DNA of 64,000 nt from Lytechinus pictus. Its lineage: Eukaryota. The stretch is taken from the NCBI RefSeq assembly GCF_037042905.1, contig NC_087248.1, positions 6,882,001 through 6,946,000 on the forward strand, read 5' to 3'. This document shows, in pieces, positions 34,601 to 37,600 of the stretch (position 1 is its first letter; each line of letters opens with the position of its first letter). The translations under genes were made by a program, and so were the position numbers. Under the pieces are notes generated by a model. It was not told the DNA's origin and ran no database searches. It saw only the letters and a program-made list of their open reading frames with translations.

Positions 34601-37600
34601 TTTTTGTTCCTTTTAACTTGATTTTCCCCGTTTTTGGGCAATTAATGCCAAGAGGGAATATTTATTTGCATTTCGGTCGCGTTAATTTTCAAAAGTTTGA
34701 TTCATTAAAGACAAAAATTGAAGAGCCCGACGGGTGGATTTTGCATTGTAAGTCCCCCATTAATGGTGGCTGCACGATAGCGAGTAACCCAGGGAGCTCC
34801 GGCCCGCTGCGCGGGCCGGAGCCCAGGAGCTTACCGTGTATTTTACCATACTCACGGGACTAGGGTGAATTATGGTCTAAATATTTCTCCAAATGAATTG
34901 TGAAAACAGAAATTATGCACTTACCACGATTATATGGATGAAGGTCTAACGAGTGGCAGTTTCCTGACATCTGGGCACAGACTGGAACCTCAAAAAACGA
35001 AAAGTTCTCTCCTTCTACCCCCGTCTCGATCGGCCATTTTTGTTATGAATTGTAACAAAATGGCCGATCGAGACTGGGGTAAAAGGAGAGAACTTTTCGT
35101 TTTTTTGAGGGTCCAGTTTGGGCCTAGATGTCAGGAAACTGCCACTCGTTAGACCTTCATCCATTATAATCGTGGTAAGTGCATAATTTCTGTTTTCACA
35201 ATTCATTTGGAGAAATATTTAGACCATAAATCACCCTAGTCCCGTGAGTATGGTAAAATACACGGTAAGCTCCTGGGGCCCGTTTCTCAACACCTGGACA
35301 AGTTAGTCATATCTTTATCCACCAACCACGGAGTTAGTTCCAATCTTACTAAACCCGTTTCACGAAGGGCTTCCTAACTAGAATCCCTTGATATCGATAC
35401 TATCGGTTGAAAGAGCAGACGAGACGTAGCCTTAGTCACAAAATAGCATAATTTTTGAAAAGCAAAAATATGATAAAACTGCAACTATTGTGATTAATTT
35501 GGAAATACATATAATAAAAATAATAGCAGAGGCAAAATATGAACCATGCATACTTAAACCATGAAGACTGGAGCACTCAATTGCTGAGAAAATCAAATTA
35601 TGAATAATTCATTTCATGACTAAAAAATCACATGGGGACATTGAGATGGGTATCCCCGGGATAGTAAATTTTGATAGTTTACGAAAGTAAACCACAATTG
35701 TTTTCTTTGTAAAATAATGATAATTATACGTTTATTTATGGTTCCAAACATCATCAAAATATAGTTTAACATAAATGTTTAAATTTTTACACACCGAAAC
35801 ACACGATTTTGACAAATTCTTTGCATAAATTAGAGATAGTATTTATCAAAAATGTTGATAAGTTTGAAAACGACGAATACGAGTCCAGTTATGGATGACC
35901 TGCCGTGGTAGAATCTTTATCGATTCAATTATTTTACTATTTCAAAATGAGTGGTTTTGTTGCGTTTTACCAACAGTTTTTATAGTTTCTGTGCATTACA
36001 ACTATTATTGAATGATCTATCACACCTGTTTTGCAATGTAATTTCAACTTCTATGAATGATTACGTAAGATTACAATTTTCAAATTTTGAGGCAATTTTG
36101 CATGTCATAGTCTACCCACGTGATGTAGTCTTGAGGACGCAATGATGATGATTTTTAAAATAATGAAATATACTTCTTCATCATTGACGTCTTGACACTC
36201 TTCCCCCAGTCGCATAAGAGAAGGACCATAATAAAGATGGATTTCCCTCGGAAATCCATCTTTAGAAACAAAAATCACTTTAATTGTATTGATTTCATTA
36301 ATTTTCACACCTTCCTACGCCTAATGCGTAGGAAGGTTTTAAAAATTATAACATGAAAATGTGAAAAATTTAAGGTTTCTTACCTAACTGATGCTGAGTA
36401 AACCCCTCGAACCACATGTAAACAACGTAAGTACAATAGCGTCGACCCTTGAACCGCTTATGTATGACGTACTTCTGGCTAGCGATGCCGTTCTGATGAA
36501 TAATTTATAGAAAAAAAATTATTTCGCAAATGTTAAAATTTATCACGTAATTAAAAATAATTGGTATGAAACTGACAATTATTTTTAATTTACGTGATAC
36601 ATTTTAACATTTGCGAAATAATATTTTTTTTCTATAAATTATTCATCAGAACGGCATCGCTAGCCGGAAGTACGTCATACATAAGCGGTTCAAGGGTCGA
36701 CGCTATTGTACTTACGTTGTTTACATGTGGATCGAGGGGTTTACTCAGCATCAGTTAGGTAAGAAACCTTAAATTTTTCACACTTTCATGTTATAATTTT
36801 TAAAACCTTCCTACGCATTAGGCGTAGGAAGGTGTGAAAATTAATGAAATCAATACAATTAAAGTGATTTTTGTTTCTAAAGATGGATTTCCGAGGGAAA
36901 TCCATCTTTATTATGGTCCTTCTCTTATGCGACTGGGGGAAGAGTGTCAAGACGTCAATGATGAAGAAGTATATTTCATTATTTTAAAAATCATCATCAT
37001 TGCGTCCTCAAGACTACACGTGATGCCACTACGTCATTAAGAAAGTAGCTATAAAAGGTTCGGAGGTGTCATAAATATTTGGTCAGGTTGTTGTCCCCGA
37101 TCTTGGCAAAGAGGGCTTCGTGAAACGGTTAGCGGACAAGTAGCTCACTATCTTCGATTTAGTCAAGAAGTTAGACTTATGACGGTGTTGAGAAACGGGC
37201 CCCTGGGCTCCCGCCCGCTGCGTGGGCGGGAGTTCCCTGGGTTAGATAGCGAGCTGTCTGTGTATGAGGAGAAATTTAAAAAATAAAAAAATGTTAAAAA
37301 ACTCCTCGAAACAGACGGCTGCCAGCTGTCTAAGGCTACGGGAGACAGTCTCCGATATTATTGGCCATGCGCCTAACTTGTTAGTGTTACTGCTGAGCTT
37401 CACCGCGCGCCGCCGCCGAACGCCTCCTCGGCCTCGATGAGTAGTCTCGCCACTTTCTTTCGACAGCTGCGACAGTCGTCACATGTGTAAACCAAACGTG
37501 ATCGTGAACCTTCGCCTGCATGCATGCATGCAGCGCAGCGCTGGTACCGGTAAAGGTAACCCAGAGAGCTCCCGCCCGCGCAGCGGGCGGGAGCCCAGAA

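What the first reader, a model, noticed from the sequence alone, without database searches (positions are those of the whole stretch)
34776..37253. Three-level nest of transposons with all TSDs intact inside RBBP4 intron 1
Seen: foldback A (34785..37244, TSD GATAGCGAG) is split by element B (35276..37202, 19-bp TIR, TSD CTG), which is split by foldback D (36126..37016, TSD CACGTGATG). Removing D then B gives ~530 bp, matching uninterrupted sister C (526 bp). Known: 9-bp TSDs with long TIRs typify Mutator/foldback elements; GGGCCCGTTT termini with 3-bp CWG TSDs typify PIF/Harbinger. Inference: several recent insertions from at least three families hit the same few hundred bp, which suggests active families and an insertion hotspot. 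An alternative is that A+B+D or B+D travelled as a composite.
Basis: partly seen in the sequence, partly recalled or inferred. Interest (0 to 1): 0.75.

Follow-up and report, generated by a model that had tools for sequence, protein, structure and literature searches.

The report
Four-deep nest of small transposons
The reported stack of jumping genes inside the first intron of the RBBP4 gene is real and has four layers, not three, but non-coding transposons landing inside one another is a well-known, ordinary pattern.

Summary
Foldback A (34785..37244, 9-bp duplication) is split by B (35276..37202, 19-bp TIR, CTG duplication). B is split by foldback D (36126..37016, 9-bp duplication). Removing D and B restores 1027-bp and 530-bp elements. 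Sister C (37557..38082) has its own 9-bp duplication.

New here: the DNA flanking A is not intron sequence but a fourth, very high-copy element, E (34413..37332, 451 bp without A). It has a 9-bp duplication, AGGCTACGG. Public reads place its right edge exactly at 37332.

Every layer belongs to a multi-copy family, and each host family also occurs without its insert: E without A, A without B (copy C), and B without D. B fits the CWG-targeting NuwaI group of the PIF/Harbinger (PHIS) superfamily. A, C, D and E fit Mutator/Foldback by duplication length only.

A phase-matched exon 1 at 38212..38194 puts everything in RBBP4 intron 1. The intron is 4166 bp and 83% transposon.

"Recent", "active" and "hotspot" are not shown. 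No read spans the locus, and no allelic or orthologous empty site was seen. The scan's other notes cover only this same stretch.

Verdict: ordinary serial nesting of MITE-like elements.

The parts
34404..34412 (.). Left copy of the 9-bp target-site duplication of E (AGGCTACGG)
   Evidence: This 9-mer occurs only here and at 37333 in the window.
34413..34784 (.). Outer element E, left part (372 bp; begins TAGAC). The last 9 bp are the target of A.
   Evidence: This is the most deeply covered part of the stretch in all runs. The family continues left of 34500, shown by the X22 loose end at 34520. The left border itself is inferred from the duplication only.
34785..35275 (.). Foldback A, left 491 bp (begins TAACCCAGGG). 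It holds the whole left arm, the loop and most of the right arm. The last 3 bp (CTG) are the target of B.
35276..36125 (.). Element B, left 850 bp (TIR GGGCCCGTTTCTCAACACC, with a second TIR-core motif at 35355). The last 9 bp are the target of D.
   Evidence: Copies of B lie in other flanks with CAG or CTG next to the TIR.
36126..37016 (.). Foldback D, the innermost element. It is an 891-bp near-perfect palindrome with termini TAGTC...GACTA.
   Evidence: Its arms are 396 nt long and 99% complementary. The DNA fold z-score is -87. The family is deep in organisms A and B and absent from organism C.
37017..37025 (.). Right copy of D's duplication (CACGTGATG)
37026..37202 (.). Element B, right 177 bp, ending in the inverted TIR. 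An inverted TIR-core motif lies at 37122.
37203..37205 (.). Right copy of B's CTG duplication
   Evidence: Sister C has a single CTG at the same site.
37206..37244 (.). Foldback A, terminal 39 bp of the right arm (ends CCCTGGGTTA)
37245..37253 (.). Right copy of A's duplication (GATAGCGAG), which is E sequence
   Evidence: Copies of E with a single GATAGCGAG appear in the joints and loose ends.
37254..37332 (.). Outer element E, right 79 bp (ends GTCTA)
   Evidence: The border at 37332|37333 is marked by many heterogeneous loose ends: 80 X11 contigs, 118+32 X22 reads and 1 X16 contig.
37333..37341 (.). Right copy of E's duplication (AGGCTACGG)
37548..38091 (.). Sister foldback C (37557..38082, 526 bp) with its 9-bp duplications CGGTAAAGG. 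It lies 206 bp from E and 102 bp from the exon 1 donor.
33880..34027 (-). RBBP4 exon 2 (…[20 protein letters not shown]…), with acceptor ttttag|AAACG
   Evidence: Pfam PF12265 CAF1C_H4-bd, E = 1.9e-18. Sequence context.
38194..38212 (-). Candidate coding part of RBBP4 exon 1 (ATGGCTGAAAAGGACAATG|GTGAG). It is phase 1, matching the exon 2 acceptor.
   Evidence: It is the only match to the search pattern upstream of exon 2. Splice context. No RNA evidence.

Best explanation
Four non-coding cut-and-paste DNA transposons inserted one after another, each into the previous one, inside what was a roughly 700-bp first intron of RBBP4.

The order follows from the nesting:
1. E, a 451-bp high-copy element with short TAGAC ends, landed in the intron and duplicated 9 bp.
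2. The 530-bp foldback A landed 372 bp into E, again duplicating 9 bp.
3. The 1027-bp NuwaI/Harbinger-type element B landed at a CTG 39 bp from A's right end.
4. The 891-bp foldback D landed at a CACGTG-containing site 850 bp into B, duplicating 9 bp.

A second A-family copy, C, inserted separately 206 bp away.

None of the five encodes anything, so transposases made by autonomous elements elsewhere in the genome must have moved them.

Shown: the structure, the duplications, the multi-copy nature of each family, and insert-free copies of each host family. Inferred: the time order, the in-situ nature of each insertion, and which transposases were responsible.
For: - Exact borders, duplications and restored lengths come. 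Each 9-mer is unique to its two flanking positions.
- E's right border was fixed independently by read and contig break points at 37332|37333. The 9 bases that follow recur at 34404.
- Insert-free paralogues exist for every layer:
  - Contigs and reads join 34784 to about 37254 with one GATAGCGAG (X1, X11, X22), and an X16 loose end reads ATAGCGAGCCGTCTGTG….
  - C carries a single CTG where B sits in A.
  - An X11 contig joins 36125 to sequence matching 37026 onward with one CACGTGATG.
- B's ends abut unrelated flanks with CAG or CTG in three runs, and D's end abuts other flanks.
- No Pfam domain is found in any ORF of A, B or D, and no transposase in the window.
- Crude ages agree with the order. 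Arm identity is 0.933 for A against 0.973 for D, or 99% gapless. The D family is absent from organism C, while the E, A and B families are present there.
- B meets the published NuwaI criteria and has paired internal TIR-core motifs.
Against: - No public contig or read spans any junction of this particular locus with long anchors, so the assembly is not independently confirmed.
- No allelic or orthologous empty site was seen.
- E's left border rests on the duplication alone, because the laid stretch began at 34500.
- Inner duplications would also be preserved if B+D or A+B+D had moved as a unit, so in-situ insertion of the inner layers is inferred, not shown.
- One organism-C contig shows a B right end next to A-like arm sequence in the opposite polarity. 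This hints that B-in-A associations recur.
Confidence: 0.85

Rival explanations
1. Composite travel. B already carried D, or A already carried B (and D), when the outer unit transposed here. That would mean fewer than four insertion events at this locus.
For: Inner target-site duplications are carried along in a composite, so their intactness does not argue against it. One organism-C contig places a B right end beside A-like arm sequence (X16 loose end at 37207).
Against: Insert-free copies of every host family exist. B ends lie in several unrelated flanks. The organism-C junction has the opposite polarity to the one here, so it is not the same composite. No contig showing the same A/B or B/D junction elsewhere was listed.
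Confidence: 0.08
2. True insertion hotspot. The 5' end of RBBP4, or the hairpin-prone MITE DNA itself, attracts insertions. On this reading the nest, sister C and a further MITE-like repeat just upstream reflect targeting or local hopping rather than chance accumulation.
For: Five insertions fill 83% of a 4.2-kb intron. Two A-family copies lie within 3.3 kb of each other. Another inverted-repeat element sits at 38781-39371, upstream of exon 1. In plants, MITEs are reported to favour genic regions and other MITEs (PMC5172404).
Against: The four insertion points share no sequence motif. Nesting enlarges the target at each step. With very high-copy families, some deep nests are expected by chance. 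No genome-wide density or repeat library was available, so enrichment could not be tested.
Confidence: 0.3
3. Assembly artefact. Palindromic or repeat-induced misjoins created the apparent nest.
For: No independent contig spans the locus. Foldback sequences are prone to assembly error.
Against: A misjoin would not give four concentric pairs of perfect duplications with each host element resuming in register. A short-read contig from organism A crosses D's central loop without a mismatch (record 6). All families occur in runs from several studies.
Confidence: 0.03

Closest known systems
NuwaI group of the PHIS (PIF/Harbinger-ISL2EU-Spy) superfamily (Han et al. 2015, PMC4482050)
   Same: B has a 3-bp CWG duplication (CTG), a 19-bp TIR within the 12-61 bp range, and a TIR starting GGG. 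Other family copies are flanked by CAG or CTG. Like a Tourist-type MITE, it is non-coding and carries internal TIR-like motifs.
   Different: No transposase or Myb-like ORF is present, so membership rests on structure only. The paper lists no echinoderm among its 16 NuwaI host species. At 1027 bp, B is at the upper end of MITE size.
Foldback / Mutator-like non-autonomous elements with 9-bp duplications (Drosophila FB, nematode Tm1 in PMC3169594, sea-urchin TU elements cited in PMC4079207)
   Same: A, C and D are almost entirely inverted repeat (95-98% of bases paired as a single strand), non-coding, and flanked by 9-bp duplications without an obvious target consensus.
   Different: Their arms are unique sequence, not arrays of short tandem repeats as in FB, Tm1 or TU. 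No MULE, FB or Phantom transposase has been linked to them. Foldback shape is known to arise in unrelated superfamilies. E has the 9-bp duplication but no long arms.
Nested MITE multimers of rice and maize (Jiang & Wessler 2001, as summarised in PMC5172404)
   Same: Small non-autonomous DNA transposons of different families are inserted into one another near genes, by independent events, with duplications preserved.
   Different: This case is in an animal, four layers deep, and mixes 9-bp and 3-bp duplication families. No genome-wide frequency has been measured.

Membership tests
PHIS superfamily, NuwaI group (element B) | 3-bp target-site duplication 5'-CWG-3' | tested here: met
   CTG lies on both sides. 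Sister C gives the paralogous empty site with one CTG. Other copies are flanked by CAG or CTG. Criterion from PMC4482050.
PHIS superfamily, NuwaI group (element B) | TIR of 12-61 bp, usually starting GGG | tested here: met
   Perfect 19-bp TIR GGGCCCGTTTCTCAACACC.
PHIS superfamily, NuwaI group (element B) | Autonomous partner with a DDE transposase and a Myb/SANT ORF sharing these termini | not testable with these tools
There is no transposase in B or in the window.
Mutator / Foldback (elements A, C, D, E) | Target-site duplication of about 9 bp (8-10) | tested here: met
   Perfect 9-bp duplications flank all four, and no other length fits.
Mutator / Foldback (elements A, C, D, E) | Long terminal inverted repeats (foldback structure) | tested here: inconclusive
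   Met for A, C and D (arm identity 0.93-0.97, fold z-score -50 to -87). Not met for E, where only TAGAC is shared and each end has a small hairpin.
Mutator / Foldback (elements A, C, D, E) | MULE/FB-type transposase in an autonomous relative with the same ends | not testable with these tools
   No genome-wide search was possible. Viral and metagenome scans were blank or chance. Merlin (8-9 bp duplications) therefore stays open.
hAT (considered for D and E because of the TAG ends) | 8-bp target-site duplication | tested here: not met
   Only k = 9 gives identical flanks. Shifting the ends by one base breaks the match.
SINE (considered for E because of its very high copy number and lack of TIRs) | tRNA-, 5S- or 7SL-like pol III head and an A-rich or simple-repeat tail | tested here: not met
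   ARAGORN finds no tRNA and Rfam finds no such family in 33000-39000. The ends are TAGAC and GTCTA with no tail. RNA reads lie equally on both strands.
MITE (general class, all five elements) | Small, non-coding, high-copy, with defined ends and duplications | tested here: met
   Sizes are 451-1027 bp. No domains are found. Depth is orders of magnitude above the unique spacer in X11.

The most novel reading that the evidence does not exclude
The nest is not chance accumulation. On this reading the B (NuwaI-type) family repeatedly targets the CWG at the base of the subterminal hairpin of A-family foldbacks, as hinted by a B/A-like junction of opposite polarity in a third species. The 9-bp families E, A/C and D, which all begin with TA and carry terminal hairpins, would be moved by one transposase with a preference for structured MITE DNA at the open 5' ends of genes. 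That would make this a self-reinforcing insertion trap.
Probability: 0.12. Interest if true: 0.45.

Novelty: new member of a known kind. Interest (0 to 1): 0.25.

Why it matters
This is a very clean example of serial transposon nesting in an animal. Four concentric elements from at least three families each have intact duplications, so the order of events can be read directly. The nest gives exact ends and target sites for four sea-urchin MITE families, including a CWG-targeting NuwaI-type element in a phylum not listed for that group. This is useful for repeat annotation, for dating family activity, and as presence/absence markers between Lytechinus species. It does not reveal a new mechanism, and nothing indicates an effect on RBBP4.

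Tried and rejected
- **Public collections:** Exact-pattern scans with B's TIR and D's end found nothing in viral contigs. The metagenome scan gave 13 hits, all single 18-23-bp matches in high-GC bacterial contigs, so these are chance.
- **Scan notes:** Look-ups by sequence for D and E were blank. A word search for other nests was blank.
- **Coding capacity:** Pfam on eight ORFs of A, B and D gave no hits. Long ORFs of the window are host genes, not transposases.
- **E as a SINE:** Rejected.
- **hAT reading of the TAG ends:** Rejected because the duplication is 9 bp, not 8.
- **Rfam microRNA hits** at the centres of A, C and D are all far below gathering scores and simply reflect perfect hairpins.
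- **GC-rich spacer 37400-37470** was considered as exon 1. It has no in-frame ATG and almost no RNA depth. The exon 1 candidate is at 38212 instead.
- **Reads:** They could not confirm the locus itself. No run holds more than 28% of its words, and no contig spans it.
- **Left out on purpose:** The joined exon 1 + exon 2 peptide was not sent to any tool. The large protein searches were not needed.

Full report
**1. The observation**

- A runs 34785..37244, begins TAACCCAGGG and ends CCCTGGGTTA. It is flanked by GATAGCGAG at 34776-34784 and 37245-37253.
- B runs 35276..37202 with a perfect 19-bp inverted repeat, GGGCCCGTTTCTCAACACC, and CTG on both sides.
- D runs 36126..37016, from TAGTCTTGAGG… to …CCTCAAGACTA, flanked by CACGTGATG.
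- Removing D plus one duplication leaves B at 1027 bp. Removing B plus one CTG leaves A at 530 bp.
- The sister copy C is at 37557..38082. It is 526 bp, 91.2-91.7% identical to the restored A in either orientation, and has its own 9-bp duplication, CGGTAAAGG.

Only a length of 9 gives identical flanks for A, C and D. Each 9-mer occurs exactly twice in the 64-kb window on either strand. Chance does not explain this.

**2. A fourth, outer layer**

I laid one 3.7-kb stretch (34500-38200) on four public runs: organism A contigs, organism B DNA contigs, organism C DNA contigs, and organism A raw RNA reads.

The most deeply covered parts were not A, B or D but the supposed intron sequence either side of A, at 34500-34784 and 37245-37332. 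The spacer 37352-37475 and the stretch 38096-38200 are at unique-sequence depth.

Contigs and reads from three runs join 34784 to about 37254. They skip A+B+D and one duplication, and the letters in between are a diverged version of 37254-37275. An organism-C contig reads ATAGCGAGCCGTCTGTGTACGAGG…. So A sits inside another repeat, E.

E's right edge is marked at 37332|37333 by many contigs and reads that run on into mutually unlike sequence: 80 contigs in X11, 118+32 reads in X22 and 1 contig in X16. The nine bases after that edge, AGGCTACGG, recur only at 34404-34412.

This gives E = 34413..37332, or 451 bp without A, with ends TAGAC…GTCTA and a 9-bp duplication. The left edge is inferred from the duplication alone, because the laid stretch began at 34500. 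One RNA loose end shows that the family continues at least to 34491.

E is not a foldback: its arm identity is 0.50 and its fold z-score is -4. It has no tRNA-like or other pol III head and no tail, and RNA reads lie equally on both strands. I therefore read it as a short-TIR DNA element rather than a SINE.

**3. What the layers are**

None of them codes for anything. There are no Pfam hits for the ORFs of A, B or D, and the window holds no transposase.

A, C and D fold almost completely on themselves as single strands. Between 95% and 98% of bases are paired, with z-scores of -50, -58 and -87.

B meets the published structural criteria of the NuwaI group of the PHIS superfamily: a CWG duplication, a TIR of 12-61 bp, and a TIR starting GGG (PMC4482050). 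B also carries an inverted second copy of its TIR core, CCGTTTC[A/T]C, about 75 bp inside each end, as expected for paired transposase-binding sites. Other B copies in three runs have CAG or CTG next to the TIR in unrelated flanks.

For A, C, D and E, the 9-bp duplication fits Mutator/Foldback-type transposases and excludes hAT. The same paper stresses that foldback shape arises in unrelated superfamilies, and Merlin also makes 8-9-bp duplications. No autonomous partner could be sought, so that assignment stays open.

**4. Independent insertions or a composite?**

Every host family also exists without its insert.
- E without A: the joints described in section 2.
- A without B: copy C has a single CTG at the homologous site.
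- B without D: an X11 contig joins 36125 to sequence matching 37026 onward, with one CACGTGATG.

B and D ends also abut unrelated flanks. This makes serial insertion the simplest account. It cannot exclude that an inner pair arrived together, because inner duplications travel with a composite.

One organism-C contig places a B right end beside A-like arm sequence running inward rather than outward. That is a different junction from the one here. It hints at recurrent B-in-A insertion and remains unexplained.

**5. Age and activity**

Crude indicators agree with the nesting order E, A, B, D.
- Arm identity is 0.933 for A, 0.958 for C, and 0.973 for D, or 99% over D's 396 gapless bases.
- This B copy differs from the family majority at 25 or more listed positions, against two for D. 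The table is truncated, so this is a weak comparison.
- The D family is absent from organism C, while the E, A and B families are present there.

Intact duplications say little about age. At a few percent divergence, a 9-bp pair stays identical more often than not. Only D looks young, and nothing shows that any family is active now.

**6. Host gene**

Exon 2 lies on the minus strand at about 34027-33880 and matches the RBBP4/CAF1C histone-binding N-terminus at E = 1.9e-18. Its acceptor leaves two bases of a split codon.

Upstream of exon 2, the only sequence matching my pattern (ATGGC, up to 12 further open codons, then a phase-1 GTRAG donor) is ATGGCTGAAAAGGACAATG|GTGAG at 38212-38194. Read conceptually, this gives MAEKDN, then E, then [10 protein letters not shown]…. 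I sent no joined sequence to any tool, and no RNA evidence was obtained.

Intron 1 is then 4166 bp. The E nest and C, with their duplications, make up 3464 bp (83%). The pre-insertion intron was about 700 bp.

**7. The hotspot idea**

The four nested insertion points share no motif, and each insertion enlarges the target for the next. In rice, more than 10% of MITEs sit in multimers formed by independent events (PMC5172404).

On the other side, sister C lies 206 bp from E. Another inverted-repeat element lies at 38781-39371, upstream of exon 1.

Without a genome-wide repeat map, enrichment cannot be tested. The idea is possible but not shown.

**8. Limits**

- No run holds more than 28% of the stretch's words, and no contig spans the locus. 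The assembly is therefore supported only by its internal logic, namely four concentric perfect duplications with hosts resuming in register, and by one organism-A contig that crosses D's loop without a mismatch.
- The species name (Lytechinus pictus) comes from earlier AI notes, and I did not verify it.
- Public-collection scans were blank or chance.
- The scan's other notes on this feature (s1-311634, s1-311751) are re-readings of this same stretch, not other DNA.

**9. Verdict**

This is a real, four-deep, well-preserved nest of non-autonomous DNA transposons in RBBP4 intron 1. It is an ordinary phenomenon involving new or unnamed members of known kinds.

Noticed in passing
window 38781-39371: A MITE-like element of about 590 bp with long imperfect inverted arms (three concentric repeat pairs). 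It begins TTAAAGGGATGGTCC and ends GGACCATCCCTTTAA, about 570 bp upstream of the RBBP4 start codon. The TTAA at both ends suggests a TTAA-duplicating family.
   Followed up: no
window 38557-38588 and 39478-39509: Inverted G-run and C-run segments (32 nt, 84% complementary) bracket the element above. This may be a second nest on the promoter side of RBBP4.
   Followed up: no
window 37037-37207 (organism C contig): In a third species, a B-family right end (…GGGCCC CTGGG) is followed by GCTTACCGTGTATTTGACCATAG. This is A-like arm sequence running towards the element centre, the opposite polarity to this locus. It could be an independent B insertion at the mirror CWG of an A-family element.
   Followed up: partly
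window 35014-35083, 37776-37865, 36525-36615: The central hairpins of A, C and D give sub-threshold Rfam matches to several microRNA precursor families (39-50 bits against gathering scores of 90-96, and 29 against 70 for D). This is most simply because they are perfect hairpins. Small-RNA production was not tested.
   Followed up: no
window 34413-34440 and 37308-37332: Each end of E is itself a small hairpin: TAGACCAAAAGCTTTGGTCT on the left and AGACGGCTGCCAGCTGTCTA on the right. A and C also carry a GC-rich subterminal hairpin. All four 9-bp-duplication elements start with TA.
   Followed up: partly
window 33656-33834: An inverted repeat of 58 nt (72% complementary, 63 nt apart) lies just downstream of RBBP4 exon 2, in intron 2. 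It may be an old MITE.
   Followed up: no
window 7739-8836, 16265-17287, 44404-48402, 54974-55747: Neighbouring genes: two galactose-3-O-sulfotransferase ORFs (+), alpha-amylase exons (+), and a QRICH1/DUF3504 ORF (-).
   Followed up: partly
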